From NCBI GenBank assembly GCA_977020255.1, contig CDROCS010000740.1:496001-560000 (forward strand): a stretch of DNA of 64,000 nucleotides, given 5' to 3'. Below the pieces are notes generated by a model. That model searched no databases. It worked only from the letters and a program-made list of their open reading frames with translations, and was not told the origin of the DNA. Below, in pieces: positions 14,446 through 64,000 of the stretch (its first letter is position 1; each line of letters opens with the position of its first letter). This DNA comes from Obrimoposthia wandeli. Its lineage: Eukaryota. The translations under genes were made by a program, and so were the position numbers.

Positions 14446-14462
14446 TTGCCGAGTGTGTGTTG

Positions 14463-15092
14463 GTTGCCATGGAAACACGCATAGCAACTGAGTGTATATT
14501 GGTTGCCATGACAAGCACCATGTTTCCATGGCAACGGCCATCTACTCGGGATAAATTTTTCTTCGGGGAGGGTAAATGTCTTTATTCTGAAAGACACACA
14601 TCCCCTACTTATTACTGAACCAATATTAGTAGGAGGAACTAATACTGTTTTCCCACAAAATAAGACAAATATCCCCCTTTCAAATGTTTACTATACGCAT
14701 TGATTATACTTGAATCAATCATAATTTACGAAAAGGAACTGTTAAATTTGTTTAAGCTCCGTAAGCAAATGTAATAAATCTTCCAGAATCATTGCTTGTA
14801 TTAACTTCAATATTGTTTATAGAAGAAGAACTCACAGGAATATATATTGGATTTTCAATACCCATACTTGTGCTTTTCATGTTGAACCCGAATTGATTTT
14901 ATTAATGGAAGTTTAGTTCCTCCTACGAATATTGGTTCAGTAATAAGTAGGGGGATGCGTGTCTTTCAGAACAAAGACATTTACCCGCGAAGAAAAAATT
15001 ATCCCGAGTGGAAGGCCGTTGCCATGGAAACTTGGTGCTGGTCATAGCAACCAATACACTCACTATGTTGCCACGTGTGTTGCCATGGCAAC
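14463..15092. promoter_or_regulatory. Cluster of RFX X-box motifs inside the Polinton termini
   Basis: GTTGCCATGGAAAC (14463, 15018), GTTTCCATGGCAAC (14522), a perfect GTTGCCATGGCAAC (15079), and half or variant sites at 14480, 14502, 15041 and 15067. This is a motif match only; function is not shown. Confidence 0.5.
14645..14945 (-). pseudogene. Polinton penton C-terminus plus start of the core-protein gene (fragment)
   Basis: Aligns by eye to 26290-26600 (ATTATACTTGAATCAATCATA..AATCTTCCAGAATCAT..TTAACTTCAAT..ATTTTATTAATGGAAGTTTA..GGTTCAGTAATA). Minus strand ends KGGYLSYFVGKQY, paralleling QGGNLPYFTGKQY. Confidence 0.85.
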
Positions 15093-19904: not shown

Positions 19905-22900
19905 TCAAACAAATTTTACATTATCCGGATAGAGATAGTGTCCATATACGACTGATCGGTTCTATTCCACCCATTTCCGTTTATTATCGGAACTACTTAA
20001 GGAAATTATAGTCACCTTTACTGTATACAATTGATGATTAAATGAGCTTATGCGGCTCTGCTGCACACGCTCACTTACTCCGCTTTCGTACACAGCAAGG
20101 AAATTACTATGTTTTAAGTTAGTTTGCCTCAAGCTAATACCCTTCGCTCTCATATGCGAATCTTCAGCCGTAGTCAACATACTATAACATTAAGGATTTT
20201 AAAATATGCACACTTTATAAGTACATATCCCTTTACTCTAATCCTTAAATTTTCCTATTTCCGTATTCGCAGTCAAATAGAGTGGGTGAGTTATAGGATA
20301 TTTAGAGGTATTCAAATAATCCATCTGATATCATAGCAGGCAATAAGTCAGCTTGAACATTTACGTTTCTACATTTCAGAAAGAAGCTGTCCGTATCACC
20401 CGCAACGATTCTAATGGAACAGTTAAATTGTACTCTGCACTTCTCTAACTGAGTGTATTGGAGCTCGTACATCCTTAACTTACTCAAATCTAATACCGTC
20501 TGCCCTGTGTAACTTGGTCTATCCAAACAAATCATATCCTTGTTGAGTAAAACTGCAACAAGGTCATTATCTATTTCTATAAACTTACGAAATTGAGCCT
20601 TACTGTATTACAGATTCTTAGGTTAATTCTCTTTTTCAAATTTTCTATCAATTTTCCAAAAAGAGAATTAACCTTTAACTTATAAAAATCTTTCTCAAAA
20701 TCATTTGTTGCCATAGCCCTCTTTTCAGAATTTGATTTAATATACAGCTCAAAGACATTAGTTTGTTCAAACTTGACTGCACGAGTCTAAGATACATCTG
20801 AAGCAGACGAGAATTGACAAGATAGTGTCTTTTTACCCAATGAGTCAAAAGTAGTTTAACTGTTTTGCTACCAGGTGGGCAATCCTTTTTAGAAGCTAAA
20901 GGTAGATCATCTAAATAATTATGTAAATTATCGGGAATACACAAGTCGACTTCAACTAAATGTGCATGTTGGCTACAGCTTAAATCCTTATATGAAAGTT
21001 CTGATATTAAGTCCCCTAATTCTACCCGATCAATCACCCATGAAAACTTTCCTACTGGTAGAAATTGGGACATGGCCCAGCCATATAAATTATTAACATC
21101 AATGTATAATAATGTGTCACCGTTGTGGATACCCGATGCTCATTGACGAAGGTCATCGCGCCTCGAATTCCCCCATGAAACATCTGATGCATTTCCGGAT
21201 CCTGGATGAGTTCCACTGTAGGTCATGCCAGAATAGCAGGGCTTGTAGTGGTTGCCTCGGTGCCCAGTAATAATTTGAAAGCGCTCATGAACGTCAATCC
21301 TAAATTAATTAAATTTATTAAATTTCAAAAATTACAGAAAATATACAAAAAGTATATTTATTAAATTGAGTATTTTTTAAATATTACAAAAAAATTACCA
21401 ACAGTATATTTAAACAAACCAGGTATCGAGAAGAAGTTCAGAGGCTCCAGTCCGTCGTCTGAGATAGCCCAATACCGGAAAGCCGTGAAGAAGTCAGCGA
21501 GCAGGTATACGTCGATTTTCAGGTAAACCAACATATAGTCCCAGATTGAAGCGCAATGGAGATTCTTTGCATGCTCGTACTGGTCGTTGCTGATGTCATC
21601 GTTCCATTTCGCGGGGATGCTTGTGATTTCCCGTAGAGCAGTCTCGGATACCGCTAGATCGTATGGGAAGATTACTTTTCCCGTGACGAGATGAGGTGGG
21701 AATACTGAATTTGTTAGCGGAACATTTCCTAGATTTCCGACGAGTTTCTCGAGACTGATATCCAGAAACTGAAGTGAGACGATAAATCGAATACACACTC
21801 CATCAATGTGTGCGAGCATCGCCTGGAATTTTTCAGTTGATTGTAGAATCACTGAAATACTCCAATGAGAAAACTTATTCAGCGCATGCTTGAGAATGTG
21901 ATGGAGATCGTACTCTCTCAGGTTATAGAAAACTACTGGGATAGCATGATTCAGTCTTCAAATTACAATTGGAATGGGCAGCTCCAAGAAATTCTCCGGT
22001 CATGTGATCATCATCCCGGACCTTATTTACACAGCGCTTATTACACAGGTAACATTTTGTGGCCGCTACGTAACTCGCTACCTGTTCCGGTGTGAGTGGC
22101 TTCATAACTTCCATTGCATGCTGTCTGTACCAAGGCAGCACCACAGTCTTCACCAAGTCCTCCAGTTTCTTCAGAAAGTCAACTAAACAGTTTTCTCCAG
22201 TATAGACTGAATAGTCATGGGTGTATCCAGTCGCGGAACCAGGAGACATCAACATACCGGCCGCTATCGTGAGATGAATCTGACGATGAATGCCGTAAGG
22301 AGCAAGAAACGACTCGAAATCCCCATATACGACGAAGGGCGAAGAGATTGTTTTCATGAAATCCTTAAATGCAATCACTGATTCCGCAGGCATGGTGAAT
22401 AACGTGATCCGATCAAAATTCATGCGACAGAGAGGAATATGCTTTTCGTAGCTGAGCGCTCTCCGGAACCCGTGCAGGTACTTATGACACCAAGTGCACT
22501 GAATTCGCGTACCTACTCCTCTATTACGAAAATTCAGTAATTTATTAAGTTTCAGTTCCGGAGTGTAGTGAAAAGATTCATTATCCTCAATAAGAAGGAT
22601 ATTCACCGGATTCTTATCAGGATTACAAGTCCAATATATCACGTCGATAAACGGATTCTTGAAAATCTCCTGATTATTAGGCAATAATCCAAACCTTTTA
22701 TATGAAAAAACATTGATTGAAAGAGATGGATTTTCTCTCTCAAATCTCGGAATAACCGCGAGTCGCATTGGCATATCCTCATCCTCGTATTTTAAATTAC
22801 CTAAAATTCATTATATTGGGCTGTCCGATACCTATGTCCCGGAATAATATGATATTTCAAAAGAGCTAAAATGCTGTAAATTAAATAAAGTACACCAGAA

Positions 22901-32608: not shown

Positions 32609-35600
32609 ATGATGGAGTACAATCGTCCAACAAGTGTTATGAGCATGTTGGCGGACCAGATGCAACTTTCTTGCCTCAACGACCAAGAAGAGATGGGGTT
32701 ACCTGTCAATCAGATAAACTGCCGCTTTTCTCCAATCGAAAACAACGTAAGATACGCGTTTGGCTCTTGTTAATGTAAACTTAGTACAGTTTTAGTACGG
32801 TTTGTTCCAAAATATCTGTGATCTGTTTTAGTTTTATTTAATGTTTTTATGATTCCTACATCAAGTAGATTAATTTTTGAAATCATAATACAGTCACTAT
32901 TTTTATCCTTATTATTTATGGTTATTTTATTTCAGAACACATCAGACGACGACTTCGAAAAACACAGTGAGTGTTTATTTATTTATTTAATATGTGTGAT
33001 TTACAATTGTTAATTTTTTTCTGATTAACCTTTGCGAACGTTACGTGTTGTGCAACGTGCAGTGTCGACGAGTGCTCCCCCACAAAGACTCTCGCTCCGT
33101 GGTGCACATCCATTCTCTGGCGAGCCGTCTCTGTTGGTGGAGGAGCCTCCGACAGTAGCAACAGATGACCACTGGACCGGGGGCCATCAGCTGCCTTCCA
33201 AGCGCAAATGCCACTCTGTATCCGGTCATCTGCCGCGTCCGATAGCACTCAAGCCCATCCAGCACCAGCAGCAGCAGCACCATCATCAACATCATCAACA
33301 CAGCCAACACCAGCCACAACATCACCACTGTCACCATCATTTTTCTCTTCCCCGAGCCACCATTGTCAGACCCATCATCTCACCACACTATAAGAAGTGA
33401 GTGTTCTTCTGCAGTTGGTGTGTTTTGCACCAGATAAGGTACACGATTTAGCGCATAAAAATTGCTATTACACTAAAAACCTTAAAATACAATTTGGCAT
33501 AGTTTATCAAGTTTTAAATTTATCATCTGATGATTGATACATTCATCTCTCAATCACGCAGTGTTTTTCTAACTTTTTGTTACTATGTCTCCCTTTAAGA
33601 AGGATCTCATCATGGGACTACCCCTTTATTTTAAATTAATACAGACACATTTTTAAATGGTAAAATAATTATTAATCCAAAAAATGATTAAAAACGTGTT
33701 TGACGGAATAATAACAAGGTTTTATCATATATATTTCTGATTCATTTCTAAGGCTATGCATGTGCTTGTTTATTTGTACGAAGTTTCTGACATCTTGGTG
33801 CCATTGAGGAGTGCTACTGTAACTCTTTTTCTACTACTAAACGGGATTGGTATTTGTATTTCATTGCAGTTAGTGCAGAAAACCTTTTTTCGCAAAAATG
33901 TAATACTACAAAATATATATATTTAATAAAGTTGACTATAATATTCTTTTATGCGTACATATTTTTATTTACAGGGTGCGGAGAAAGTTCCCGATCGAAT
34001 TTTGAAAATTGAATTAAAGATATTATTATTTAACTAAATTTATCCATTTTGGCTTATTTTGTTTGTAGATACATATATTTATATATTTCAGATCCAAATT
34101 TCCTAAAATTTAATTTGCATTTGTTTAAAATGAGTAAACGTGAGGCCATTATCCAACTTCATTGCGCGGGAAAGACGAACCCAGAGATTGTTAAGATCTT
34201 AAAAGCTCCAAAATCAACAGTTCGGGATGCAGTAAACCGATACAAAGAACTTGGGACATCAGACGATCGTCCCAGAAGTGGACGCTCCCGAACTGCTCGC
34301 ACCCCAGCCAAAATAAAGGCCGTTAGGGAGCGAATAAGGAGGAACCCCAAACGAAGAATGAGGAAAATGGCCAAGGACTTCAAAGTTGACGAAAAAACTG
34401 TCAGAACAATTGTCAAAGATGATCTCAAGTTATCCCCTTTCAAGATGACCAACAGACAACAACTGACGGAATTGCAAAAACAGAAGAGGGTCGAAAGAGT
34501 CAAGATTCTCCTGAACCGAAAGAAGGATGGCACGGATGCTGGGGTAATTGTCTTTTCTGATGAAAAAATGTTCACTGTTGAGGCCCAGTTCAACTCGCAG
34601 AACGACAGAATTTTAGCTAAGAGTGCTGATAGCATTCCCAGTTCGGTAAAATCCGTTTACCGTCGCCAAAAACCTAGCTCGGTATTGGTATGGGCTGCCA
34701 TCTCTGAGAATTGGAGATCCTCTCTCAATTTTGTTAAAGAGGGTGCCAAAGTTAACGCAAACTCGTACATCCAGGATATTTTGACTCCAGCCCATGTTGA
34801 AATGAAGAAAAATTTCAAAAATGACCCTTTCACATTCCAACAGGACGGTGCGCCCTCTCACACTGTGAACAAAACTCAGGACTGGTGTGAGAATCACTTT
34901 CCAGCTTTCTGGAGGAAGGAATTGTGGCCTCCTTCATCACCTGACTTGAACCCTCTGGACTTTTGTGTCTGGTCCATCTTGGAGAGAGAGGCCTGCGCTA
35001 CAGCCCATGATAATACAGAAGCTTTGAAGAAGTCTCTTAAGCGGGAATGGCCAAAATTCCCCAGGAATCCTTTCGTGCCGCAGTGAAGAGCTTCAGGGGG
35101 ATACTTGAGCGTGTAATTGAAGCCAAAGGCGGCCACATTGAAAAAAAGATAGTATAAATGTTAAATAGAGCTCTAACAAATTGTGTGTGTTATTTTTTGT
35201 TTAATTTCAACCTTTATTAGTTGTTAAATTTAACGTTTTATGAGATCGGGGACTTTCTCCGCACCCTGTATATACGTTGTTATGAAAATTATATTTATGT
35301 TAAAATGTTTGCGCTTTTCTTTGCACTAGTCCGTGTATCCCCAGGGAGGCATTCTTTCCGGTTTGGATATCACTGCATTAACGGTTTTACCAAGTGTTCT
35401 CGATCGGATTAAGGTCCAAATATAATAATAGCCAATCATCGATTTATGAGCCAATTATTTGTAGATCGTGAAATAAATTATTCATAATGTTACCAAATAT
35501 GCCGAATGAATGGATGTATTGTCTAGCATGAAGTAGAGGTTCTCGTCATATACGAGAGCGTCATTCACCATAACCATACCGGACGAGTTGTGCTTGGCTG

Positions 35601-44600: not shown

Positions 44601-47521
44601 TTTGAGATAGTTTTCCAGTTTAGAACTGAGTTTTAATAGATTATATTCTAAACAAACCCAAAATCTTAAAAATAAGGTAAATATAAAAGTATAAGTATTT
44701 GATTATTTCGCTAATTTCATATAAATACAAAAAAATTATTTACACTTTTAACTTTTTTTTTGTTAATTGCACGTTAATTAATCATTGTTTGAATACTGCT
44801 AATATATCATAGAAGTGTGTCATATCGATGCCTTTTTAGATTGAGGTTGTGTCATATCGATGTTGTGTCTTATCGAATTCATGTCATATCGAATTCATGT
44901 CATATCGAATTCATGTCATATCGAATTCATGTCATATCGAGGTTGTGTCATATCGAATTCATGTCATATCGAGGTTGTGTCATATCGAATTCATGTCATA
45001 TCGAGGTTGTGTCATATCGAATTTATGTCATATCCAGGGTGTGTCATATCGAGGTTGTGTCATATCCAGGGTGTGTCATATCGAGGTTGTGTCATATCCA
45101 GGGTGTGTAATACCATGGTGAGTGTCATATCGATCTTTTTTTAGATTGAGGTTGTGGCATATTGAATTCATGTCATATCGAGATCGTGTCATTTCGATGT
45201 TGTATCATATCGATGTTGTGTCTTATCGAGGTTGTGTCATATCGAGGTTGTGTCATATCTATGTTGTGTCATATCGAGGGTGTGTCATATCGAGGTTGTG
45301 TCATATCCAGAGTGAGTCACATACAGAGTGTGTAATATCAATGTTGTGTCATATCGAGGGTGTGTCATATCGAGGTTGTGTCATATCGAGGGTGTGTCAT
45401 ATCCAGAGTGTGTCATATCCAGAGTGTGTCATATCCAGAGTGTGTCATATTCAGAGTGTGTCATATCGATGTTTTTTTCATATTGAGGTTGCTTCATATC
45501 ACGGTTGTGTCATATTTTGGTTATGTTATATCATGTTTGTGCTATATTGAGGTGTTATATCGAGACTGTATCAGTGTGTGATGCAGTGTGCTAGAACTTG
45601 AACGGGTCTCAAGTGAGAACCACTACCCGTACAGAGTCAACAACCCTGCTTCCAGGAGTGCTGTGAGGTTACTATTACGCCTCTGCAGCAGCGCTGCCAC
45701 TCTCAGCCTTCAGATGAGAGTGCGGTACGTGGCCACTGCAATCGCCGGCAGCAATCACGTCGCATCATTGGCACCCCGGTTGTGGAGACCACTATGTCTG
45801 CAGCCGCTGGCACCCATCACAGACCCGATCCACTGCCAATTCGTGCCTCCACACAAACTCGCTGCAAGCGTCGCTATCCCTCCGACACGCAGATCCCAGA
45901 GTTCGGGACTGATTGCAGGAGTCAGGTGAGGCTATCTTGAGATCAATGTATTTCAATGTCAGAGACTTAGCAATAAGAATTGTGCTGTTTATTTTCAAAC
46001 GCTAACATGTGCCATTGTCTGACGTTTGTGACCGTGTTGCAGGCAGGAGCAGGCGGCGCCAACTGCTGTGTGTGCTGCAAGCCGAGACGAGGCCCCTGCT
46101 CCAGCAGTGCAGACAACAGCCCCAGTGCCCTAACTGGAGGCTGCCACAGTGGTCAGCGCCGCGACTGCTTCTTCTTCAATAACAATCGCAACTACCAAGT
46201 CAGTCTGCCACGGATCGCCAGCAGTCCACCACCCCAGTCTTTCGCCAGTGTCGCGACATCGTATGCCTTTAGCAGTGGGGGCAGTTCTGGTCGCAGACAG
46301 AGGATTGGCTCCAACTCCAGCAGCCACTCCACATCCACAACTGTGGATGCCAACACGCCCACAGTTGTCCCGTCTGCCGTAGCCCCACAGACGCCATCCT
46401 GTGCCAGGTCACAGACCGATGGTGACTTGGTGAGTGCCTTTTATGCTTATCTCCATTTTGTTGGTATAGGTTTGTCCCATTTTAATTTACTTGTATGAAA
46501 CTTGAAGAAAATCGATTTTTGCTATCTACTCTATTTAAATAATTATCACAAACTAAGATATTGAGTTGTTACTTGTTATTAATCGTTAATGTATCTACAA
46601 GCGATGGAGTTCATCTAGTGCTAAGAACAACAATGTATTACTGCTTCATGCGAGTCTTAAATCCGTCTGATATTTGTAAGAGAATGTGCCAGATACTCGG
46701 AGAGAATAGTGAGTATGACAACGTGCCAAAATTGACTAAATAAGTGTAGAAATGCTTTAGAAAAAACCCAATAAATGGATGGTTTGAACTTAAAACCACC
46801 AGAAACCGCTTTTACTATTTTATTAATTTTTAGCAAATAAAAAAGTTATTTTTACTAAAGAAATATTTATACAAAAATGGGTATATACGTATAAAAGAAG
46901 CTTATAATATTTGTGGATGAATAAATTTAACAAAAAATGTAAATTACACTTTGTATTTTGTCTTATTTTCACTAGTTTATTTATTTAAGTGTACACTATG
47001 GTGTAGTACATAATTATTAAAATGCCACAACATGCTACATATTAGCTTAGGTTGTCTTACCATTGATAAGGGACGTATTAAAATGTATACGAGAAGAGTT
47101 TTTGTTGTTTTATTCATTGTCATCAATCAACAATTTATAGTTATAAGAGCCAAACTACAGCCAAAATCAGATGTTTTTTAAATAGCGAAGAGACAAATTG
47201 ACAGCTTTTGCGAGTTGTTCCTTTAAAAGACCCGAAATCGGCTAAGGGTTACCAGATAACGATGGTTGCTGCTTGTCGCAGATGGACACCGATCAGCCGG
47301 AGTCGCCGCTGGTGGCCGTACCGGTGCTGCAGCTGTCCATGACAATCGGGACCGCTGCGCTGCGTGATCCTGGAGACCCCCCGGAGATCATGACGTTGAT
47401 GGGGCCGCCCTCATTCGTCAGCAGCGACAGCGGCAGCAGCACCACGGACGACTACGATAACCACTACCAACATCAACCGTCTTTCCAGCCACTGGACATT
47501 GACCAGATCGAGCTAGACTGA
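32609..47521 (+). CDS. FAM53: FAM53-family nuclear protein, 7 coding exons: 32609-32746, 32936-32966, 33063-33396, 41368-41740, 45635-45925, 46043-46429, 47282-47521 (about 597 aa)
   Basis: All introns are GT..AG and the phases chain without error (0,1,2,0,0,0). Motifs occur in FAM53 order: MSMLADQMQLSCLND (compare MVTLITEKLQSQSLDD), PSKRKCHSVS (PTKRHCRSLS), FSLPRA, RPASDSSSGFHD (RPSSASGGFVD), QRCHSQPS (RCRSQPC), RCKRR, and terminal LDIDQIELD* (LDIEQIEKN*). The RPSLDF motif was not seen. Confidence 0.8.
33972..35268 (+). mobile_element. Tc1/mariner superfamily DD37D (maT) transposon, full length 1297 bp
   Basis: TA TSD on both sides. 25-bp TIRs CAGGGTGCGGAGAAAGT(T/C)CCCGATC match at 24 of 25 positions. 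Lies in FAM53 intron 3. Confidence 0.97.
34130..35157 (+). CDS. DD37D transposase with one late frameshift
   Basis: ATG at 34130 (MSKREAIIQL); HTH; FSDEK; FQQDGAPSH then 37 residues to SPDLNPLD. A probable 1-bp deletion near 35048 shifts off the expected end AKIPQESFRAAV..IEAKGGHIEKKIV* (stop 35155-35157). Confidence 0.9.
36551..36803. mobile_element. hAT (Charlie-type) MITE, 253 bp
   Basis: TIRs CAGCGGTTTCCAAA and TTTGGAAACCACTG. 8-bp TSD CCTTAAAT and CTTTAAAT (7 of 8 match). Confidence 0.88.
37506..38400 (+). mobile_element. Merlin (IS1016-like) deletion derivative, 895 bp
   Basis: TIRs GGCAGTATTCGA(C)AGTATTCCT and a perfect 8-bp TSD AAAATTTA (37498-37505, 38401-38408). ORF 37771-38160 has the Merlin N-terminal zinc region CKCHRPMKL..LWKC..SPWHRTWF..YW but no DDE core. 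Confidence 0.88.
42770..42870 (+). mobile_element. LINE ORF2 3' end fragment
   Basis: YNNLPINLRNCKNVE; the nucleotide sequence resembles the reverse complement of 4990-5040. Confidence 0.5.
44817..45530 (+). repeat. 16-bp minisatellite (GAGGTTGTGTCATATC / GAATTCATGTCATATC) in two related blocks
   Basis: Period 16 (GAATTC at 44875 and 44891). Blocks restart at about 44817 and 45122 with the same GTGTCATATCGAT..TTTTTAGATTGAGGTTGTG leader. Confidence 0.95.
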
Positions 47522-51958: not shown

Positions 51959-53169
51959 TTCTACTAGTGGATGATGAATAATAAGGCTGGGCTTTTACTT
52001 CTAATTTTGTTGCAGAGACCTGCATCATCATTTTTAAAAGTAAAGTTAACATTAACATAGAATTTAACTGGATGCATAGAAAGCATCGGCTGGAAAGTTT
52101 AGAGTGATTATTGTTTTTAGTAGCAGTTTCTATAAATTAATTATGGGCTTTAGTAAATAAGCCTCGGGTTTTAGTAACCATTTCTATCGATATAACATTA
52201 TTCTTGCGTCTCATAGTAAAGTATTTTGATTCGAGTAGTAAAATTTTAGATGAATTATTTATAGTAGCCATATTTATGAAGATAACTTTATTCTTGGTTT
52301 TGCATTTTCCGTTTCTAGTATGTAAGTCTGTAAATCATGATGAACTAGATAAGATTATGAAACAGATAGATAATTTTGGACTTGATGAGTTATCAGATTT
52401 AATAAAAAGATTCACATGAAGTCTCATGCAAAGATTAATGCGCTATCAGCGATGTTCCAGACTAAGATAGGATCTGGTTCGAGTACAAAGGCATTTAAAG
52501 ACCAGACACTGCCCAAGGGATTATTTTGACCGAATATGTTCAAAGAAAAACTTACTCAGAGATTTTACAAAATTCGACTAGCGATTTTAAAAGATTCAAC
52601 GAGACTTCTGACTCACTCCTTGGCGATTCATATGTGGAGATTTTCAGTGGATGGCAGGTGCGAACCGAGAAATCACACCAGCCGACATTGGTGGAGGTTC
52701 ATAAACGAAGTTTGACGGAGGGATGCTTCGCAGTGCCGGTTGATGATGGAGACAGCGTGCATCCAGACGCAAGGATCGTGGTATCAGGAAAATATAGATT
52801 TTACTTCTCAAGAAAAGCGGCAATGTCGAGGAGAGATGGCCGTCGAAAGAATGACATGTACGATAACCAGCGATGTCGATGTTCCAATGCGGAAGACAAG
52901 GCGAAGGAAATGGATCGTGAAGAAGAATCATCAGATGCAGAGGAGAAACCAATAGAAATCAGACGCGTTTATGAAGATGAAGAAGATGAAGAATTATCAT
53001 GGAGTTCGAGCGGTGAAGTCTGAGAGAAGAAGTGCGCGTTCAGTGGTGGTGATGTGATTGGGGATCATGGGTGGTTGGCGGAGGTGATGATGCGGGTCAA
53101 TACTTTTTATACATATGACGAGATGTAAAGGTAAAGCCCTTGAAACGGAATGCCACATGAAAGGACGTA

Positions 53170-56100
53170 ATGGAGGAGATTCGGAAGCGATATGGGTTTG
53201 AGGAGGAGGATTTCTGGTTACAACGCCAGGGAACGAAAGTTGAGAGGAGGGAAAACATTGGTGAAAGCAGCAATGTTGTCTTGATGAATAGGTTGAAAGG
53301 GATAATTTGGGAGGAGAACAACGAGAGCGCGGATAGGGAGAGGGTTACGAAGTTGGATATAATATTGGCTGGGGATGAATCGACGGAAGCACGTAATACG
53401 GAAGAGGATTCAGACAAGAGAAAGATGTATAGGGATATCGTACGAAGATTCAGCTAAAAGAAAAACAAGTAATTGGAGCAGGCAGTGGAAAACAAAGAAC
53501 ACCTCAAGAAAAAGAAAATAAAGAGTGATATTGCAAAAGCAGAAAGGGAATTTGAAAGTAGAACCACAAAAGAGTCAAAAAATATGAGAGAGGAAACCAC
53601 TAAAGAAAAGAAGTCAAACCAAAATGAGTTGAGGGGGCTAAAGAAGATTTGCATCCCTTATTTCTTCGGAGATTATAAACAATATGAAAGTTGGCGAGCA
53701 ATATTTGAAACAGTCATTGATCAAACAAATGCGCTAAAACAAGAGAAGATGTTGCAACTTATGGAGTATGTTAAAATGAACCATACAGATTAATTCAGAA
53801 CCTTGAATTCACAGATATAAGCAATGATGAAGCCTTAAAATGTTTAGAGGAGAGATGCATAAAAACGGGAAAGGAATTACCGAGGTTCGATGGACGAAGT
53901 TGAGAAATTCAGGGTGGTAAGATGGAGAGAAGACCAAGATCTGGATGCATTTGTCCAATTGATAAATAAAATAATAATCAGAGTGAGAGCGAGGGACGAC
54001 AAAGGCGATCTTATAAATGGGTTTTATTTAACAAGTTGCTGAGAAAATTGCCAATGTCAGGGGTGATGGATTGGACAAAATGAGTACAAAAAAATAGTGA
54101 GGAAGAAAATGTATGCACGTTAAAGATATGGGCACATCAAGAAAGTGAAAAAGGAAAGTAAACAAGGTTATGGGGAGTGGCAGGAACATACAAAAAGTAA
54201 GTATTAATCATGAAACCTATAGGAGACGAACCGGCGAGTTTGTAAAAGGGGCGAGAACATTCGTGGGAAATGCAAAAGCTAATAGCAGAATTAGTTCTGG
54301 ACAATTTCAAAGGAAGGGGAGAAAGATAAAATGTCTAAGGTGTAATATGGAGTACTACACAAACAAATGTGAAGAATTAAAGAAACTATCAGTAGCGAAA
54401 CAAAGACAGTGGGTCGACAATGAACGTTTATGTCGAAATTTATCTTCGAAATAATCATGATCTAAATCCAGTGTAAGGTGGATAAATTGTGTAGAATGAA
54501 CGACTGCATTGGCAAACACCACTGGATACTACATGCTAATGAAGAGTGAAATAATCAGACGCACCCAAACTCCTTCTTTACAAGGTAAATAAAAGAAGAA
54601 AATACATTCGTGGCGTTAAGAACAGTACCAGTTATAGTACGACATAAAGGTCAAGAATTGGTGGCGAGGAGGACCAGATGAACATATAGCAAGATGAGTT
54701 TTTATTAAGGCAAGATATGGGGTGGCCAAAACAACCAACACAAGAAGTGATGTCAACAGAAGTGGAAAAGAAGCGAAATGTGATAGTGACACATGTTACG
54801 CTGAGGATCGATGGATTCAACATAAGTAAGTATTCGACACTAGCAAGGTTATAAAGATGCATGGCGTGGATAATTCGTTTCACAACCAACACACGGTTAG
54901 ATCGAGACAATAGATTATTGAAGGAACGGGAAATCACAGAGATTCAAAATGCAACAAAGCAGTTATTAAAAGCTGAACAACAAAGATATTATCATGAAGA
55001 TTATAAAAGACTAGATCAACAAAGGTAGCTAGAGAATGGCAGTGGTCTAATTAAATTGAACCCATAGATCGATCCAGATGAAATGATACGGTCAAACCAA
55101 AAATTATCCATGCACAAATTTTTGATTATCAAGCAAAGTATTCTATAATATTACCTAACGAAAGTTGGGTTACAAGATTGGTTGTAGAGACGCAACACAG
55201 AAAGCTGCACCATTATGCAGGCGTGTAGCATGTGATGTGTGAGATAAATAAGCAATATTGGATTCCAAAAGCGAGAAGATTAATAAGAAGTGTGGAATTA
55301 AAATGTGTGACATGCCAAAAGAGTAAAGCGAGTGGAATGTCAGCTGCAATGGCTCTTTTACCGTATTTCCGTTTTGAAGAACCGCTCAGAGCATTCGCGA
55401 ACGTAAGAATTGATTACGCAGGATAATTTTAACGAAACGCAGAATGAAACGGTACTTGTGTTTATTAACCTGCTTAAAGACACGCGCAGCACATTTGGAG
55501 ATCACGTATGATTTGACAACATATGAGGTGATCAGAGGGTTAAAACGTTTTATTAGAAGATAAAGAAGACCGATAATGTTATTATTAGATTACGGGCGAA
55601 ATTTTGCTGGAGCAGTAGCAGAAGTTATAAATGCTGTGAAAGAAACGTACGGGATTAAGAAAGAACTAGAAAAGGAAGAAATACGATGGGTGTTCAACCC
55701 ACTTTATACGCCGAGCTTTGGAGGAGTGTTTGAAATTGTGGTGAAGTACATATTGAAGTACACGAAAAAGGACATATTTAAGTTACTGTCAAAGGCGACC
55801 ATAAGTGACGAAGAGTTAACTAAAGCATTGATAAACTTACGATCGATTGGGATAAAAAGTATGGATCCGAAGGAGAGCGAGGTGTTAACACCAAATCCTT
55901 TTTGATAGAAACTTAGAAACGTGTTTTGAAGGACAACGGTGTTGTGTGTAACAGCGTCGGAGATTGGTCCAAAAGTTGACGACATAGCTATGGAAGCGAT
56001 GGATGGAGAAAATTGTGTCAATTTGGGCACCTCGACAACGATGGAATTAGGAACGTACTGTTTAAAGATGGAGATATAGTCTGGGTAATTGACAAGCAAA

Positions 56101-56291: not shown

Positions 56292-56482
56292 TGTTTTGTA
56301 ACGAGAATTATGCTAGAAGCTGAAAATTCAGAAGGTAAAATATGTAGATAATCACATGCTGAATAATAAAAAGTAAGCATTTGATTATTTAATAAATAAT
56401 TAAATTAACTATTAAATATAAAAATGTTATAATTGGGATAGTAAAAGACCAAAATATTATGATATTGTATTATCTGAAAATA

Positions 56483-56828
56483 TTTCGATCAAATTTTATC
56501 CACTGGAACAATAATGTTTCGATCAAATTTTATCCACTGGAACAATAATGTTTCAATCAAATTTTATCCACTGGAACAATAATGTTTCGATCAAATTTTA
56601 TCCACTGGAACAATAATGTTTCGGAACAATAATGTTTCGATCAAATTTTATCCACTGGAACAATAATGTTTCAATCAAATTTTATCCACTGGAACAATAA
56701 TGTTTCGATCAAATTTTATCCACTGGAACAATAATGTTTCAATCAAATTTTATCCACTGGAACAATAATGTTTCGATCAAATTTTATCCACTGGAACAAT
56801 AATGTTTCAATCAAATTTTATCCACTGG
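56483..56828 (+). repeat. 34-bp tandem array, about 10 near-identical copies
   Basis: Unit TTTC(G/A)ATCAAATTTTATCCACTGGAACAATAATG. CACTGG recurs at 56501, 56535, 56569, 56603, 56653, 56687, 56721, 56755, 56789 and 56823, with one 16-bp slippage near 56620. Confidence 0.97.
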
Positions 56829-57399
56829 CCTTTTAGTAAGCAGTGTGCAGCTTAAATATCCAAACAAACTGCTGACAGTGATGTTGCAATTTCCAGAGCT
56901 TTTTCTGTTTTTTAATCCAATTAGACTATCTTGTTCGAATGTGAATCTTAAAAAATCAAAGCTCCACTTCAAACTATAGAAAACAAGTCAATCAGTTGCA
57001 CTACAACCTCAATTCCACTGGTAAACGATCAGACAAATCAGAAACTGCAAGAAATACTCCTGCACACATACACCGATGGCAGCGGATCTGGGCAGAGAGG
57101 GAAACTTTTAAACACACATACACATGTATACATGTATGATGTATGTTGCTGGCGAGTAAAAACTGGGCAGATGGGGAAAATGTTTTATACATACATACAC
57201 ACCAAACAATATGTGAGTGAGTGAGTAAGGAGAGTGAGTATGAGTTGAGTGAGTTGTGAGTGTGAGTGAGTATGAAAGTTAAGTGAGTGTGTGTATGTGT
57301 TGAATTGTGCACTTGCGCACACCAACATCACATGTCGACGATATTCGTCGGCACATGAAAGGGGAATCTTTCCCTCTTTTCCCTGGCTTTTTTTATTAT

Positions 57400-57445
57400 T
57401 GTTATCTCTGGCTTCGCGGAATCCACCGCGAAGTCAGAGATAACA
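57400..57445 (+). other. 20-bp RNA hairpin immediately 5' of hammerhead 1
   Basis: TGTTATCTCTGGCTTCGCGG (AATCCA) CCGCGAAGTCAGAGATAACA pairs fully with one G-U. A homologous hairpin precedes hammerhead 2 (63523-63572, minus strand). Confidence 0.85.
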
Positions 57446-57449
57446 AGCC

Positions 57450-57500
57450 ATCTCCCTGATGAGCCCGGCAGGGCGAAACGGGCTTTTTCCCGTCGGAGAT
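57450..57500 (+). ncRNA. Type I hammerhead ribozyme 1 (intact core)
   Basis: AUCUCC-CUGAUGA-GCCC(GGCA)GGGC-GAAA-CGGG(CUUUUU)CCCG-UC / GGAGAU. All core nucleotides and stems I-III are present; predicted cleavage is after C57494. Confidence 0.95.
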
Positions 57501-59439
57501 TGATTATCTTAAGACAAAATGCCAAAGTGCATATTTTCAAAATAGAACTTTTCCCTAATTAAGGAAAGTTCTTAATTAATTCTTTAGTTAATTAATTCTT
57601 TTTTACTTTTTATTTTTTTAAACATTTTTATATTTTTTCAAAATAAATAGTTATAATATTTTCCCAACAAAAATATCATATAATATTATATCATATTATT
57701 ATTAATTATGGAAGTTATGAAAGTATTGGAAATGTTATGGTGATAAAAATAAAGTTTTTAAAAATTTCTATGTTAATTGATTTATGGAAGATTTAATTTA
57801 TGTTTTGATGAAATGTTTTGTCTCAATGTCTTATGAAAATAATGATACAATGCGATTTATGAATTTGTCATGTGATGAGATGAAGAATAAAGTTATGATT
57901 GGTGTTATTATGTTTTATTCTACCACGTCTTCAAAGGATTTATTTGTGGCTTATGTTTTGGAGACGTTAATGAGGAGAAATAAAAGTTTATATCTTATGA
58001 ATTCTATGTTTTATGGTACGACTCCCTCCCTAAAGTTCAGAATAAAGTTCAATATAAAAAAGGTGTCTTAATAATTTAATAAGTATTTTGTGATGGTGGA
58101 TGGGGTTGCAGTAGAAAAAAACACTTATACATTACTTTAAATAATTCATAAAGTCATATATATAGTGATTTAGTGGCAGAGGCATGGAATGGTCGGTACA
58201 TGTGCGGATAAATTGATAAATTTCAGGAGCTAAATGGTAAGCCAAGAATAGTAGGGATCAGATCAAAATCGCTCTTGATGGAATTCAAGTTTCATATAGG
58301 CTTAATCTTCGAATTTAATTTATCCACCTTAACTACTGTACTATCTATTGCCAGTAAACTGCACTTATGCAGTTGAAAAGTGTATATATGTCTCAGGACA
58401 TGTATAGATTTTTATACACACACATTCACGAAATTTCACTCCAAACACACATGAACAGTTTTAAAGGACATTGGTACCCCCAGGGAGGATGGTGTGGATT
58501 AGACCGAACATATCCACCTACTTATACCATTCAGTTGTTGAAAATATCGGTTATTATTCTCAATTCATCAGGACATGAAGGTGTAAATCAAGAAAAAAGT
58601 AACCATGAGAAATTTTAGTTGCATCTTGAAATGAATTTATCAAATATTGTCTGTTAAAGAGAAATGCTTGACATGAAATATGTTTAATAACCGTTTGATA
58701 ACGAGGATTCTTAAACAAAACCAAGTAATGTACGTTTAAATTACGTGTTCTATGTTTACCACCTTGATGAAATAGGTCTTGAGTAATGAAAACTACAGTA
58801 ATACAGTTGTGTCTTGCTATTTTTGTGAATAAATTATTAAAGTTTTACTTTTTATTTTCTTCTTCGTATAAGTCATCAATTACTATAACATCATTACGTT
58901 TAAACTGTTTTAAACAATTTTGATAGAAACCATTGATAATTTTTTGTTCTTAAGTTTACATAATTCACTTTTTGTTAACCCAGATTCGCAAGTATCATCA
59001 TTATGTCAATAAATATTATTAAATCGACAATTGAACATTTTATTGTTTTTTAATAATTTCGTTACAAAATGTGTTTTTCCACTACCACCGGATCCTACTA
59101 TGTAATATACTATATCATTTTTAAGTTTCATAATAAATAAAAATAAATGAGAAAAAAGATTGTTTAAAAGCATTTTATTAATATATACAACAATATTTAA
59201 TTAAAAATTGAAACATAAAACGTTATATACATCATGTTTGTACAATTAAGCTGAACCTCTTTTTTTAAATTCATTTTCCATTTAAGATCTCTATGGACAT
59301 GTGAGTGAACAATTTCTCTAAGATGATTACAAGAAACTTCATTAAACGAGAAAATTATTGAACTAATTTTTTTGTTTCATTTAAAATTTCCTCGACCGAA
59401 TCATCGATTAATTTATCAATTTTACCCATTTACCATGGA

Positions 59440-61300: not shown

Positions 61301-63470
61301 GTGATTTGAGTAAATCAAATAAAGAATTCGTAATTGACTCCATAATTAACTCCATACTTGAATCATCAGAGAAGTTAGTAAAGTATAATAGAAACCAAAA
61401 AAGTAGATAATCATAAAATTACAGTTGGGAATTGTAGGACAGTAATTATGACATAGATGGTTATAGGATTCACTTAGTGGCGCCGCTATAAATACGAATT
61501 ATATCATGCATCCTTTTAATATTTCGTTTGTAATTGTTGTCATAACTGTGAAATTAGGCTCGAACATCTACTCATAAAAGTTGTTATAACGCAACTTAGA
61601 AAATCCCAACAATGATAAGACTCCAAAGCTATTAAGCCAAAATCTGAGTATGGATTATGTAAAAAATTCAAATAGTTGAAAAACAGATATATCATAAACA
61701 TATCAAAAATTAAATGACTATTTCGAATTTAAATAGTGCTATGAGCCTATGATTTATGTGACATATGACAAAAAGAATGTCAAATAGACTAAAGAAGTGT
61801 CAACTTCCATAAGACAAGTTCAATTTGTCACTTCAAAAACACTTAAAAATTAATCATTTGTATAATTACTCAATTAGTGAGATTGGAGAAGTTAATGTTA
61901 TTTAATAAATTATATTTATTACTCGAATTTATATGAATATAACTTTAGTACTAATGTTTGTCAACAGCATAAAGTATGTTAAGTATTAATAATATTAATA
62001 ATATTGATATAATAGAAATATAAATTTTCTTTCTGTCAAATTCTGCACTTTTAAAATTTAAAATTAAATTTAAATATACGAATTTTTTAAATAAATTTAT
62101 TTAAAACTCTTCATTATTTATTTTATTTTTAAAACTATTATAGTTTAAAACCCAAAATAATTTGCAGCATTTAATTGATGACAACATTTATTCTATAGCA
62201 GGGTTGAATGAATGGTGGACTAATCATTATGTTTAAGTTGTCTCAGGCTATAAATGAGTAATCTAATACCAAATAACAGAAAATTAAATCAGAGTCACTA
62301 AACGAATTTTTTCAAAATTGCAAATTGAAACTATTGAAGATAATGTCAAAATATGATGAAAAGTCGGAAAATGGTTGTTTAGTTATTTTAAAATAATTAT
62401 TAGTTTAAAACGAATTTATAATTATCATTATTCATTGGATTTGTTAAGCCGCTTAACAAGTTAAGCGTAAGGAAATTAACCAAATAGTGAAATATTTAAA
62501 CAACATCTTAATTGATTTAAAAGCAACTCATATTAATACGTTTAAGTATTAAATATACATGTGAATACAGTTCTATATATGGGTCTATGTATATGGACTC
62601 TCAAAAGTATTATATATATATATCTATATGCATTGTGTAATTGTATTAATAAAATATAATGTTGAAGTAATTTTATTTTAATGTTGAAATGGAGTTACAA
62701 GAATTTTAAAATTGTAATGTAGGAACCTTTTTTTTGAAACACGCTCTATCAACCGTGTTTTACGTTGAATACACATATACAAAATATTAATATGTATGTA
62801 CTTATTTATATATTATAATTTCAATACAATAATATTAATTACACAGTATTGATTTTTAATATGTTGATGGTTTTGATTGAAAAGCTATAAAACAATAGTG
62901 ACACAATATAACCATTGTTATTGTTATGTGTGTTATTGTAAAACATTTAATTCATTGCTATATTTATTTTAAATTATTTTTAAAAAATCAAATTGGTTTG
63001 AATTATTGCAGAACGCGAGATAAACATGTTCCATGTGTAATTGTTCCTGCAATGCACGCCTGGTATCTCTGCTTTGAAACCCCAACAAACTTTACATTTT
63101 CAAAATATCAAGAGTTTTACACTTCAGAAGCCTAACATTCATAAATTAAACTATTATATAAAATGAACATAAATAACACAAGGAACTATCGTTAAACTAT
63201 GTATTCGTAATAATAATATTATATTGCACATGTAAAATATGATCAGATGACTAATTCAAGATAAAAACTGAATTTTTTCTTTAATTCTGTATCTTTAACT
63301 TGAATTAAAATAATAATAATAAATCTTTCATTATTATTGTTAAAATAAATTTTTTCTAATTCTTCTTATGTGTTGGGATTTAAAATTAATTAAAAAAAAA
63401 TTTATGTCAATTCATTTAAATTGACATTTGACAGAAATGCCCACAATCAGGGAGGTACTTTTTATGTTCA

Positions 63471-63520
63471 ACCTCCAACGGGATAAACCCGTTTGGCCCT
63501 GCCGGGCTCGTCAGGGAGGT
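63471..63520 (-). ncRNA. Type I hammerhead ribozyme 2 (G12 to C change, probably inactive)
   Basis: Minus strand ACCUCC-CUGACGA-GCCC(GGCA)GGGC-CAAA-CGGG(UUUAU)CCCG-UU / GGAGGU. The cleavage position is between 63477 and 63476. Confidence 0.85.
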
Positions 63521-63824
63521 GGCATTATCTCTGACTTCGCAGTGGGCAAACGCCCGCGAAGCTAGAGATAATAATGATTGATGTAAGAATGCACATATGT
63601 GTAAAGAGGCATGCATCACACATCTACTCACATACACACATTCACTCACTCACACAGGTACTCACTACTCATCAAATCTGCGGTGTATGTATGTGAGTTA
63701 TTTTCCACCTGTCCAGAATTGTTGGGTCTTTAATTAAAATTAATTAATTTAAAAGTCAATTTAAATTGACATTTTCTAAAAATAATCTAAAGTGCCCACA
63801 ATTAGGGAGGTTTTTCAAAATTCA

Positions 63825-63876
63825 GCCTCCGACGGGTTGTTAGCCCGTTTCGCCTTGCCAGGCTCATCAGGAAGGC
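63825..63876 (-). ncRNA. Type I hammerhead ribozyme 3 (intact core)
   Basis: Minus strand GCCUUC-CUGAUGA-GCCU(GGCA)AGGC-GAAA-CGGG(CUAACAA)CCCG-UC / GGAGGC. Cleavage is predicted between 63831 and 63830. Confidence 0.95.
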
Positions 63877-64000
63877 GGCTATTTTTTGATAAAAATAAAA
63901 AGTGGTTTTGACCACCAAAGATTTTCCGCCCAGCTTTGCAGCAGATGCGGCGGCGGTTTGCCCTTTCTCGGCCGGTTCCGCAGTCCGCAGTTCCGTGTCT

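What the first reader, a model, noticed from the sequence alone, without database searches (positions are those of the whole stretch)
57130..57600. Third hammerhead on the opposite strand gives three-way covariation and a conserved hairpin-ribozyme module
Seen: across the three copies, stem II changes C-G to U-A (GCCC/GGGC versus GCCU/AGGC) with the GGCA loop fixed. Stem I changes UCUCC/GGAGA to CCUCC/GGAGG to CCUUC/GGAGG. Stem III stays CGGG/CCCG while its loop varies freely (CUUUUU, UUUAU, CUAACAA). A 20-bp hairpin precedes copies 1 and 2, and further small hairpins lie at 57331-57375. The surrounding unit is otherwise quite diverged. Inference: structure was selected while sequence drifted, so the family has several old subfamilies, and the upstream hairpin may be a functional element (replication, protein binding or a dsRNA trigger) that I cannot assign to a known class.
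Basis: partly seen in the sequence, partly recalled or inferred. Interest (0 to 1): 0.75.

Follow-up and report, generated by a model that had tools for sequence, protein, structure and literature searches.

The report
Hammerhead-ribozyme repeat family, retrozyme-like
Three copies of a small self-cleaving RNA motif (type I hammerhead) sit in short non-coding repeats of an AT-rich, animal-like genome; this is a known kind of mobile repeat ("retrozyme"), and the hairpin beside it looks like one arm of the repeat's folded RNA in one subfamily, not a new kind of module.

Summary
Three type I hammerhead motifs exist: A 57450-57500 (+), B 63471-63520 (-) and C 63825-63876 (-). All 45 helix cells pair. 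Three pairs carry compensatory changes (two in stem I, one in stem II), loop II is fixed and loop III is free.

- B has one substitution at an invariant catalytic-core position, so it is probably dead.
- C, which has an intact core, lacks the hairpin and has an unrelated 6-bp one instead.
- With two copies, the hairpin's covariation has no statistical weight.

B and C are tandem. Their cleavage sites lie 354 nt apart. That monomer is non-coding, 40% GC, and folds as a circle far better than shuffles (z -6.7). This matches the metazoan non-LTR retrozyme / hammerhead-satellite class (PMC7229834), so it is a new member of a known kind.

The hairpin is best read as one arm of the self-paired RNA. 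In whole-unit folds stem I is displaced by flanking complementary boxes, at a cost of 2.3-3.9 kcal/mol. This suggests a transiently active ribozyme, as in viroid-like RNAs.

No further copies could be retrieved and the organism was not identified. Interest is modest.

The parts
57450..57500 (+). Copy A: complete type I hammerhead. Stem I has 6 bp, stem II 4 bp with loop GGCA, stem III 5 bp with a 6-nt loop. The predicted cut is after 57494.
   Evidence: Own descriptor passes. Rfam Hammerhead_1 matches end to end at 32.5 bits against a gathering score of 34. The fold is and the pair counts.
57399..57446 (+). Copy A: 21-bp hairpin with a 6-nt loop, 3 nt upstream of stem I. It contains one G-U, so it pairs fully only on the ribozyme strand.
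57447..57449 (+). GCC linker just 5' of stem I. It is identical in A, B and C and complementary to GGC of loop II, so a 3-4 bp pseudoknot is possible. It is also part of the target of the upstream box.
   Evidence: Read from the alignments. The pairing is an inference.
57163..57181 (+). Copy A: upstream box. Its 6-mer AGAUGG is complementary to CCAUCU, which is the linker plus the start of the stem I 5' strand. An older duplicate of the box lies at 57088-57106.
   Evidence: It is the best duplex partner among 366 upstream windows, at -14.7 kcal/mol. The duplication is shown (D2). This helix is not populated in A's equilibrium ensemble.
57189..57298 (+). Copy A: long-range stem (57189-57200 with 57287-57298) enclosing a GAGU-rich tract. 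The same arrangement occurs in unit B.
   Evidence: (I5, I7), TRF, and the folds.
57331..57375 (+). Copy A only: two small hairpins in a segment of about 45 nt that unit B lacks.
57501..57669 (+). Copy A: tail after the cut. It contains a pyrimidine box (57545-57562) and an AT-rich tract, and ends at CCCAACA (57663-57669). Unit A spans roughly 57088-57669.
   Evidence: Alignment and the sequence. The bounds are approximate.
63471..63520 (-). Copy B: hammerhead with all three helices intact but one substitution at an invariant catalytic-core position, so it is probably inactive. Its other two differences from A in the core and cut site lie at positions the hammerhead definition leaves free.
   Evidence: It fails the descriptor. 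Rfam Hammerhead_1 scores 18.2 bits.
63524..63574 (-). Copy B: hairpin homologous to A's. It has a 17-bp stem with one A-C mismatch and one G-U, plus a 4-bp apical extension created by a 5-nt insertion.
63698..63716 (-). Copy B: upstream box. AGGUGG is complementary to CCACCU of the linker plus stem I 5' strand. It marks the 5' end of unit B (63716 down to 63371).
   Evidence: Rank 1 of 286 windows. The helix has a pair probability of 0.96 in the whole-unit ensemble. It is also in the MFE folds.
63825..63876 (-). Copy C: complete type I hammerhead. Stem II closes with U-A instead of C-G, and loop III has 7 nt. The predicted cut is after 63831.
   Evidence: The descriptor passes. Rfam Hammerhead_1 scores 19.5 bits.
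63901..63916 (-). Copy C: short 6-bp hairpin in the position where A and B have the long hairpin. Its sequence is unrelated to theirs.
63919..63933 (-). Copy C: upstream box. GGGCGG is complementary to CCGCCU. It marks the 5' end of unit C (63933 down to 63720). The DNA upstream of it is unrelated and GC-rich.
   Evidence: rank 2 of 100; probability 0.56.
63477..63830 (-). The 354-nt monomer between the cut sites of C and B. It is the RNA that would be released and circularised if both ribozymes cut.
   Evidence: The circular MFE is -112.4 kcal/mol, against a shuffle mean of -77.2 (z -6.7, 0 of 200 shuffles as stable), with 67% of bases paired. GC is 0.40.
63795..63812 (-). Downstream pyrimidine box of unit C. 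Its counterpart in unit B is at 63440-63458. It pairs with the stem I 3' strand in the inactive fold.
   Evidence: Duplex energies are -9.2 (C) and -10.0 (B) kcal/mol, comparable to stem I itself. The pairing appears in the MFE folds.

Best explanation
These are copies of a non-coding, hammerhead-bearing short repeat of the metazoan non-LTR retrozyme / hammerhead-satellite kind.

Layout. Each unit starts at an upstream box and continues through a variable, strongly self-paired domain. In subfamily A/B that domain ends in the long hairpin. In C it is only a 6-bp hairpin. A GCC linker, a type I hammerhead and an AT-rich tail follow.

Proposed mechanism. When an array is transcribed, the hammerhead folds locally and cuts after its GUC triplet. 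Two successive cuts release a unit-length RNA, 354 nt for C to B. By analogy with described retrozymes, a host tRNA ligase circularises this RNA.

Resting state. The finished RNA settles into a more stable branched fold. In it, both strands of stem I are taken up by complementary boxes, so the ribozyme is switched off.

Role of the hairpin. The long hairpin is one arm of that compact fold. It is also a fast-forming local structure that keeps the sequence just upstream from mispairing with the ribozyme.

Shown:
- the motifs, their pairing and the compensatory changes;
- the tandem spacing;
- the lack of coding capacity;
- the exceptional predicted stability;
- the complementarity of the boxes.

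Inferred: transcription, cleavage, circularisation, the conformational switch, and any role of the hairpin.

The confidence of 0.6 is for the whole statement. It is about 0.85-0.9 for the identity as a hammerhead repeat of the retrozyme kind, and about 0.4 for the stated role of the hairpin.
For: - Motif and helices.
- Rfam: Hammerhead_1 aligns end to end with all three copies.
- Tandem arrangement: the cut sites are 354 nt apart on the same strand, and B and C share 70% identity over 156 nt covering the ribozyme and what follows it.
- No coding capacity: there are only spurious ORFs of 77 aa or less, and no Pfam domain in the neighbouring ORFs. ARAGORN finds no tRNA-like part.
- GC content is 37-40%.
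- The circular monomer folds with z = -6.7. The paper defining the class describes retrozyme RNAs as highly self-paired.
- That paper reports repeats of 150-450 bp with type I hammerheads, GC below 50% and RNAs of about 170-400 nt (PMC7229834).
- In whole-unit folds, stem I is absent from the MFE in all three copies, while enforcing the hammerhead costs only 2.3-3.9 kcal/mol. Stem I pair probability is 0.00-0.07.
- The upstream box is the best partner of the stem I 5' region in A and B and second best in C. Its 6-mer changes in step with the target in each copy (and direct reading).
- Hairpin and ribozyme are the only well-conserved block between A and B.
Against: - Only three copies are available, and only two have the hairpin. 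No covariation test has power.
- All three hammerheads score below Rfam's gathering score of 34 bits, and the default scan reports nothing.
- One of the two tandem copies has a damaged core, so this particular array probably no longer releases monomers.
- The box-to-ribozyme helix is predicted for B (0.96) and C (0.56) but not for A (0.00).
- No target-site duplication was recognised. No Penelope-like element lies in the window.
- There are no expression data, and the organism is unknown.
Confidence: 0.6

Rival explanations
1. The hairpin has no function of its own. It is a local inverted duplication that arose in one lineage. A and B share it only because the hairpin-plus-ribozyme block descends from a recent common source, for example by template switching or recombination between RNA lineages.
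For: - The hairpin is absent from C, whose ribozyme core is intact.
- It is conserved by identity: 18 of 21 pairs are invariant, and shuffles do as well in 240 of 500 cases.
- The base of the hairpin is a near copy of stem I in A. Its 5' arm is also partly repeated 25 nt upstream (D7). Both point to local duplications.
- The mosaic identity pattern (85-89% against about 50%) fits a recently shared block.
Against: - The loop and apex were remodelled in B while the stem stayed paired.
- There is one compensatory G-C to A-U change at the base.
- The same G-U is kept in both copies.
- C has another hairpin at the same place, which suggests that some hairpin is wanted there.
Confidence: 0.3
2. The hairpin-plus-ribozyme block is the 3'-terminal handle of the processed RNA. 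After cleavage, the linear monomer ends with hairpin, linker and hammerhead. A partner protein, such as the reverse transcriptase of an autonomous element or the ligase, would recognise this end, much as SINEs share 3' ends with their partner LINEs.
For: - The block sits at the 3' end of the cleaved monomer.
- It is the only well-conserved part between the diverged units A and B.
- Animal retrozymes are proposed to be non-autonomous derivatives of Penelope-like elements (bioRxiv 10.64898/2026.07.22.740005).
Against: - C lacks the hairpin.
- No reverse-transcriptase gene or Penelope-like terminal repeat is present in the window.
- Nothing here bears on protein binding.
Confidence: 0.12
3. The hairpin is a source of small RNAs, or a double-stranded RNA trigger.
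For: The stem has 21 almost perfect base pairs. Transposon-derived hairpins are a common source of small RNAs (general knowledge).
Against: - The stem is short for known animal hairpin precursors, and its loop has only 6 nt.
- The only microRNA-family hits near it are far below threshold and lie in flanking TG/CA-rich tracts.
- No small-RNA data are available.
Confidence: 0.06
4. The copies are fragments of the terminal repeats (pLTRs) of Penelope-like elements, not of a separate retrozyme.
For: Type I hammerheads also occur in tandem in Penelope-like terminal repeats, and these are related to retrozymes.
Against: - Hammerheads of Penelope-like elements are described as minimal variants (PMC7229834). 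By my own recollection of that literature, they have a very weak helix III and act as dimers.
- Here helix III has 5 invariant pairs.
- No reverse-transcriptase or GIY-YIG ORF was found in the window.
Confidence: 0.1

Closest known systems
Metazoan non-LTR retrozymes (Cervera and de la Pena 2020, PMC7229834), described in corals, mussels, axolotl and many invertebrate phyla
   Same: - A type I hammerhead with a stable helix III.
- Short non-coding tandem units: 354 nt between cuts here, against the published range of 150-450 bp.
- GC below 50%.
- A monomer predicted to fold into a very stable self-paired circle.
   Different: - The sequences are unrelated to the coral, mussel and axolotl constructs printed in that paper's supplement.
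- Only a dimer and a solo copy are visible here.
- One copy has a damaged core.
- Expression and circularity are untested.
- The units differ greatly in length (about 214, 346 and 582 nt), because the domain between the upstream box and the ribozyme varies.
Classical hammerhead satellites and SINE-like repeats: newt satellite 2, Schistosoma Sm-alpha, cave-cricket pDo500 (named in PMC7229834 and PMC3088659)
   Same: Repeats of a few hundred bp, each carrying one type I hammerhead, in animal genomes.
   Different: - No tRNA-like part of the kind that, from memory, Sm-alpha has was found.
- Helix III is long, so the dimeric action described for the newt and axolotl motifs should not be needed.
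Hammerhead viroids (Avsunviroidae) and other viroid-like circular RNAs
   Same: The ribozyme-active fold is a minority conformer. The most stable fold sequesters the ribozyme strands inside a rod-like or branched structure (general knowledge of these RNAs). Here stem I is absent from all whole-unit MFE folds.
   Different: - This element is encoded in genomic DNA in tandem.
- It has type I rather than type III topology.
- There is no evidence of RNA-to-RNA replication.
Pseudoknot-stabilised hammerheads (Perreault et al. 2011, PMC3088659)
   Same: That paper reports a pseudoknot between the stem I and stem II regions in about 40% of hammerheads of all three types. Here the invariant GCC before stem I could pair with the invariant GGC of loop II. 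Stem I is two pairs longer than stem II.
   Different: Only 3-4 pairs are possible, and none of these positions varies among the three copies. The contact is therefore a conjecture. The same GCC is also part of the alternative helix with the upstream box.
Minimal hammerheads of Penelope-like elements
   Same: Type I topology, tandem arrangement, and an origin in retroelements.
   Different: The helix III here is canonical, with 5 pairs. No adjacent reverse-transcriptase gene was found.

Membership tests
Hammerhead ribozyme, type I (Rfam RF00163, clan CL00010) | Invariant catalytic core (CUGANGA, GAAA, cut after UH) | tested here: met
   Met by A and C (own descriptor; pattern). Not met by B, which has one substitution at an invariant position.
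Hammerhead ribozyme, type I (Rfam RF00163, clan CL00010) | Three helices around the core, with helix I open at the 5' and 3' ends | tested here: met
   The MFE of the isolated motifs gives exactly this fold. 45 of 45 cells pair, and 3 pairs carry compensatory changes.
Hammerhead ribozyme, type I (Rfam RF00163, clan CL00010) | Score at or above Rfam's gathering threshold (34 bits) | tested here: not met
   A scores 32.5, C 19.5 and B 18.2 bits, all as end-to-end alignments. The default scan gives nothing. Much of the shortfall is plausibly due to the long loop III, which the model treats as an insertion. I still regard A and C as hammerheads on the core and helix criteria.
Hammerhead ribozyme, type I (Rfam RF00163, clan CL00010) | Self-cleavage at the predicted site | not testable with these tools
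   No RNA data are available.
Hammerhead ribozyme, type I (Rfam RF00163, clan CL00010) | Tertiary contact between the stem I and stem II regions | tested here: inconclusive
   A GCC / loop II GGC pseudoknot is possible in all three copies. The positions are invariant, so there is no covariation to test.
Metazoan non-LTR retrozyme | Type I hammerhead in each unit of a short tandem repeat (150-450 bp) | tested here: inconclusive
   B and C are tandem with cuts 354 nt apart, but only two units are visible before the window ends at 64000. B's core is damaged, and A is a solo copy.
Metazoan non-LTR retrozyme | No coding capacity and no LTR/PBS/PPT; GC below 50% | tested here: met
   Only spurious ORFs of 77 aa or less overlap the units. 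No long terminal repeats flank them. GC is 0.37-0.40. PBS and PPT were not searched for specifically.
Metazoan non-LTR retrozyme | Monomer predicted to form a stable, highly self-paired circle | tested here: met
   -112.4 kcal/mol, z = -6.7, 67% of bases paired.
Metazoan non-LTR retrozyme | [quoted passage not shown] | not testable with these tools
   No transcriptome is available, and the organism is not identified.
Metazoan non-LTR retrozyme | Target-site duplications; co-occurrence with Penelope-like elements in the genome | tested here: inconclusive
   No duplication was recognised at the approximate unit ends, which lie in AT-rich, poorly defined flanks. No RT or GIY-YIG domain was found in the ORFs of the window that were scanned, but 64 kb says little about the whole genome.
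Penelope-like element terminal repeat (minimal hammerhead) | Minimal hammerhead with a very weak helix III, next to an RT/GIY-YIG gene | tested here: not met
   Helix III has 5 invariant pairs. No such gene lies in the window.
Hammerhead ribozyme, type III (Rfam RF00008) | Helix III open, helices I and II closed | tested here: not met
   A partial hit at 57433-57479 (27.5 bits against 48.5) uses a GUC in the hairpin's 3' arm. The sequences that would have to form helix III offer only about 2 pairs (direct reading).
Hairpin ribozyme (the catalytic RNA class) | Match to the family's sequence and structure model | tested here: not met
   No hit even at E up to 10. The 'hairpin' here is a plain stem-loop.

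The most novel reading that the evidence does not exclude
The long hairpin and the two boxes that flank the ribozyme form a conserved conformational switch. The upstream box pairs with the linker plus the stem I 5' strand. The downstream box pairs with the stem I 3' strand. The hairpin forms first and insulates the ribozyme so that it can cut during transcription. Afterwards the boxes capture both strands of stem I and lock the released or circular RNA in an uncleavable state. In addition, the hairpin-plus-ribozyme block would serve as the conserved 3' handle of the processed RNA. This would be a defined regulatory architecture for animal retrozymes, which so far have only been described as 'highly self-paired'.
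Probability: 0.2. Interest if true: 0.5.

Novelty: new member of a known kind. Interest (0 to 1): 0.3.

Why it matters
Hammerhead-bearing repeats are abundant sources of small circular RNAs in animals, and how their ribozymes are switched on and off is poorly described. If the box/hairpin architecture seen here recurs genome-wide with covariation, it would give a concrete, testable structural model for that switch. It would also explain why a block next to the ribozyme is conserved. As it stands, the locus mainly adds one more sequence family to a known class. It also shows that the default Rfam thresholds miss this family.

Tried and rejected
- **Chance motif.** Rejected: 0 matches in 100 shuffles, and the model finds only the three copies.
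- **Alternative type III hammerhead.** It would use the GUC inside the hairpin's 3' arm (Rfam partial hit). Rejected because no helix III can form. The resemblance between the hairpin base and stem I is strong in A but not kept in B.
- **More copies from public collections.**
  - Two metagenome scans: the ribozyme pattern found 0. The hairpin-arm-plus-ribozyme pattern found 6 hits, all unrelated bacterial-like DNA without a hammerhead.
  - One prokaryotic genome scan found 0.
  - A word search with the antisense ORF that spans hairpin and ribozyme, hoping for spurious gene calls on related copies, found 0.
- **Sampling a related genome.** About 50 kb around Tc1 copies was fetched from two ENA assemblies (ERZ25067582, whose Tc1 copies are 87% identical in DNA to the window's, and ERZ22157276). 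This gave a different hammerhead family but none of this one.
- **Literature.** The exact ribozyme strings occur in no held paper and in neither supplement checked.
- **Organism identification.** It failed. The Tc1 transposase's best named relatives are crustacean and nematode proteins at 62% identity or less. A second ORF had one unnamed relative.
- **Weak Rfam hits.** The microRNA, snoRNA and flavivirus stem-loop hits are far below threshold. They fall on TG/CA-rich tracts or on the hammerhead itself, and I take them as chance.
- **Box/ribozyme helix on an alignment.** Counting it failed because MAFFT places C's shorter box in other columns. I report direct reading and duplex energies instead.
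Full report
**Observation**

The window is AT-rich (about 32% GC), contains no N, and looks like eukaryotic, transposon-laden DNA. It holds a Tc1-like transposase and Polinton-type polymerase pieces.

The pattern for the hammerhead core plus stem II occurs three times: 57456-57482 (+), 63488-63514 (-) and 63844-63870 (-). None of 100 shuffles gave a match. The full motifs are:
- A: 57450-57500 (+)
- B: 63471-63520 (-)
- C: 63825-63876 (-)

Taken alone, each folds into the three-helix type I hammerhead. On their alignment, all 45 helix cells are standard pairs. Two pairs of stem I and one of stem II carry changes on both sides, and one further stem I pair changes to G-U. The five pairs of stem III never vary. 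Sliding the partners by one to three columns destroys the pairing. Loop II is GGCA in all three copies, and loop III differs in all three.

A covariance model built from the three copies, used only as a search profile, finds nothing else in the 64 kb with filters off.

The hairpin is also real. Its arms, 57399-57419 and 57426-57446, have 21 nt and are 95% complementary. It is one of only two such inverted repeats in the window. A homologue lies before B at 63524-63574.

- Copy B has one substitution at an invariant catalytic-core position. My hammerhead descriptor passes A and C but not B. The literature treats changes at invariant core positions as generally inactivating, with a few tolerated exceptions (PMC3088659). 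None of the exceptions described in that section corresponds to B's change.
- Copy C has an intact core but no long hairpin. At the same place it has an unrelated 6-bp hairpin.
- The default Rfam scan finds nothing. On short stretches, Hammerhead_1 aligns end to end with all three copies but stays below the gathering score of 34 bits: 32.5, 19.5 and 18.2.

**Anatomy**

B and C lie in tandem on the minus strand. Their predicted cut sites, after 63831 and after 63477, are 354 nt apart.

The pairwise alignments suggest a common unit plan, in this order:
1. an upstream box (A 57163-57181, with an older duplicate at 57088-57106; B 63698-63716; C 63919-63933);
2. a variable domain;
3. a GCC linker;
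4. the hammerhead;
5. a pyrimidine box about 20-55 nt after the cut;
6. an AT-rich tail ending in CCCAACA (A 57663-57669, B 63371-63377, C 63720-63726).

In A and B the variable domain contains a long-range stem around a GAGU-rich tract, then the long hairpin. In C it is about 45 nt with the short hairpin. Unit C (63933 to 63720) is directly followed by unit B (63716 to 63371). Upstream of C's box the DNA is unrelated and GC-rich. A (about 57088-57669) is a solo unit on the other strand. These bounds rest on weak alignments in AT-rich sequence and are approximate.

Between A and B, identity is 85% in the hairpin and 89% in linker plus ribozyme, and about 50% elsewhere.

**What it is**

The units are non-coding. 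Only spurious ORFs of 77 aa or less overlap them, the neighbouring ORFs have no Pfam domains, and there is no tRNA-like part. Their GC content is 37-40%.

Folded as a circle, the 354-nt monomer reaches -112.4 kcal/mol against -77.2 for dinucleotide shuffles (z = -6.7, 0 of 200 shuffles as stable), with 67% of bases paired.

This is the published description of metazoan non-LTR retrozymes: type I hammerheads in tandem repeats of 150-450 bp, GC below 50%, and expression as linear and circular RNAs of about 170-400 nt predicted to be highly self-paired (PMC7229834). A 2026 preprint relates these elements to the terminal repeats of Penelope-like elements.

The sequences here are unrelated to the coral, mussel and axolotl examples printed in the supplement of PMC7229834. 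The ribozyme strings occur in no held paper. I therefore file it as a new sequence family of a known kind.

**How it probably works**

Shown:
- **Upstream box.** It is complementary to the linker plus the first four bases of the stem I 5' strand. Its 6-mer differs between copies in step with its target:

| Copy | Box 6-mer | Target |
|---|---|---|
| A | AGAUGG | CCAUCU |
| B | AGGUGG | CCACCU |
| C | GGGCGG | CCGCCU |

  It is the best duplex partner of that region among all upstream windows in A and B, and the second best in C.
- **Downstream box.** It is complementary to the stem I 3' strand: -10.0 and -9.2 kcal/mol in B and C, but a weak -4.9 in A.
- **Whole-unit folds.** The MFE contains none of the six stem I pairs in any copy, while enforcing the hammerhead costs only 2.3-3.9 kcal/mol. 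In the ensemble, stem I has a probability of 0.00-0.07. The box helix has 0.96 in B, 0.56 in C and 0.00 in A, where other pairings displace stem I.

Inferred:
- The ribozyme is active transiently, while the RNA is being made.
- The finished RNA then rests in a fold that hides both stem I strands, as is known for hammerhead viroids.
- Circularisation would be by a host ligase, as shown for other retrozymes.
- The invariant GCC linker could also pair with the invariant GGC of loop II. That would be a small pseudoknot of the kind reported for about 40% of hammerheads (PMC3088659). Nothing varies at these positions, so this cannot be tested here.

**The hairpin**

Of its 21 pairs, 18 are identical in A and B. 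One is compensatory (G-C to A-U), one changes on one side, and one is broken in B. Shuffles do as well in 240 of 500 cases. The apex was remodelled in B by a 5-nt insertion that creates a 4-bp extension. The same G-U occurs in both copies, so the stem is fully paired only on the ribozyme strand.

My preferred reading is that it is one arm of the compact fold and a quickly forming insulator just upstream of the ribozyme. This fits the fact that C has another hairpin at that place. A neutral, recently shared block is nearly as likely. A role as a 3' handle of the processed RNA, or as a small-RNA source, cannot be excluded. Neither can be tested with two copies.

**Attempts to enlarge the sample**

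All attempts failed. Around Tc1 copies in an unnamed ENA assembly (87% DNA identity to the window's copy) I found a different type I hammerhead family in three copies, two of them 352 nt apart (L002). None of this family was found there. The organism remains unidentified.

- I did not scan the viral contig collection with the ribozyme pattern.
- I propose no bench comparison of altered ribozyme constructs.
- Locus L005 comes from a human-gut metagenome, is bacterial-like and unrelated, and was not used further.
I have deleted nothing and do not repeat those details here.
Model R1 is a search profile of the three natural copies.

**Verdict**

The locus is an ordinary but previously unlisted family of hammerhead repeats. 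Its alternative-pairing architecture is suggestive but unproven. Interest 0.3.

Noticed in passing
window 57433-57446 versus 57492-57500: In copy A, the 3' arm of the long hairpin carries a near copy of the cut site plus the stem I 3' strand, and the 5' arm resembles the stem I 5' strand. This produced a partial Rfam type III hammerhead hit (27.5 bits). The resemblance is weaker in B. It may be a trace of a local duplication.
   Followed up: partly
window 57088-57124 and 57163-57199: The upstream box and its flank are duplicated in tandem, 75 nt apart, at 73% identity. Only the second copy matches the ribozyme's 5' region well.
   Followed up: partly
L002 938-984 (-), 1105-1151 (+), 1457-1503 (+): A contig of an unnamed ENA assembly (ERZ25067582) carries three copies of a different type I hammerhead. 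Two are direct copies 352 nt apart and one is inverted. They lie between a reverse-transcriptase-like stretch and a Tc1 copy that is 87% identical to the window's. A related genome therefore also has retrozyme-like repeats.
   Followed up: partly
window 34049-35086 (+): An ORF of 345 aa for a Tc1/mariner-type transposase (HTH plus DDE_3 domains). The element spans about 33970-35270. Its closest relatives (82% identity) are unnamed metagenome proteins. The best named relatives are from a mantis shrimp and nematodes.
   Followed up: partly
window 13854-14597 (-) and 21361-22774 (-): These are pieces of a Polinton/Maverick-type protein-primed DNA polymerase. The first piece has a DNA_pol_B_2 hit. 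The others look similar by eye but have no Pfam hit. The gene is split over several separate ORFs, so it is probably a decayed copy. It was not analysed further.
   Followed up: no
window 56479-56828: A 34-bp tandem repeat of about 10 copies, 97% identical, lies about 250 bp upstream of unit A.
   Followed up: no
window 44843-45515 and 12081-12291: Two minisatellites: a 16-bp unit in 42 copies and a 15-bp unit in 14 copies.
   Followed up: no
window 52000-56000: A strongly purine-skewed strand (GC skew up to +0.32, AT skew up to +0.24) at higher GC than the surroundings. The ORFs there have no Pfam domain. One sub-threshold RXLR_WY hit is taken as chance.
   Followed up: no
window 63472-63515 (-): Rfam's tick-borne flavivirus SL6 model gives a sub-threshold hit (22.5 bits against 38.3) on the hammerhead of copy B. 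It outscores Hammerhead_1 there. This looks like a chance resemblance of a GC-rich stem-loop and is no sign of viral sequence.
   Followed up: yes
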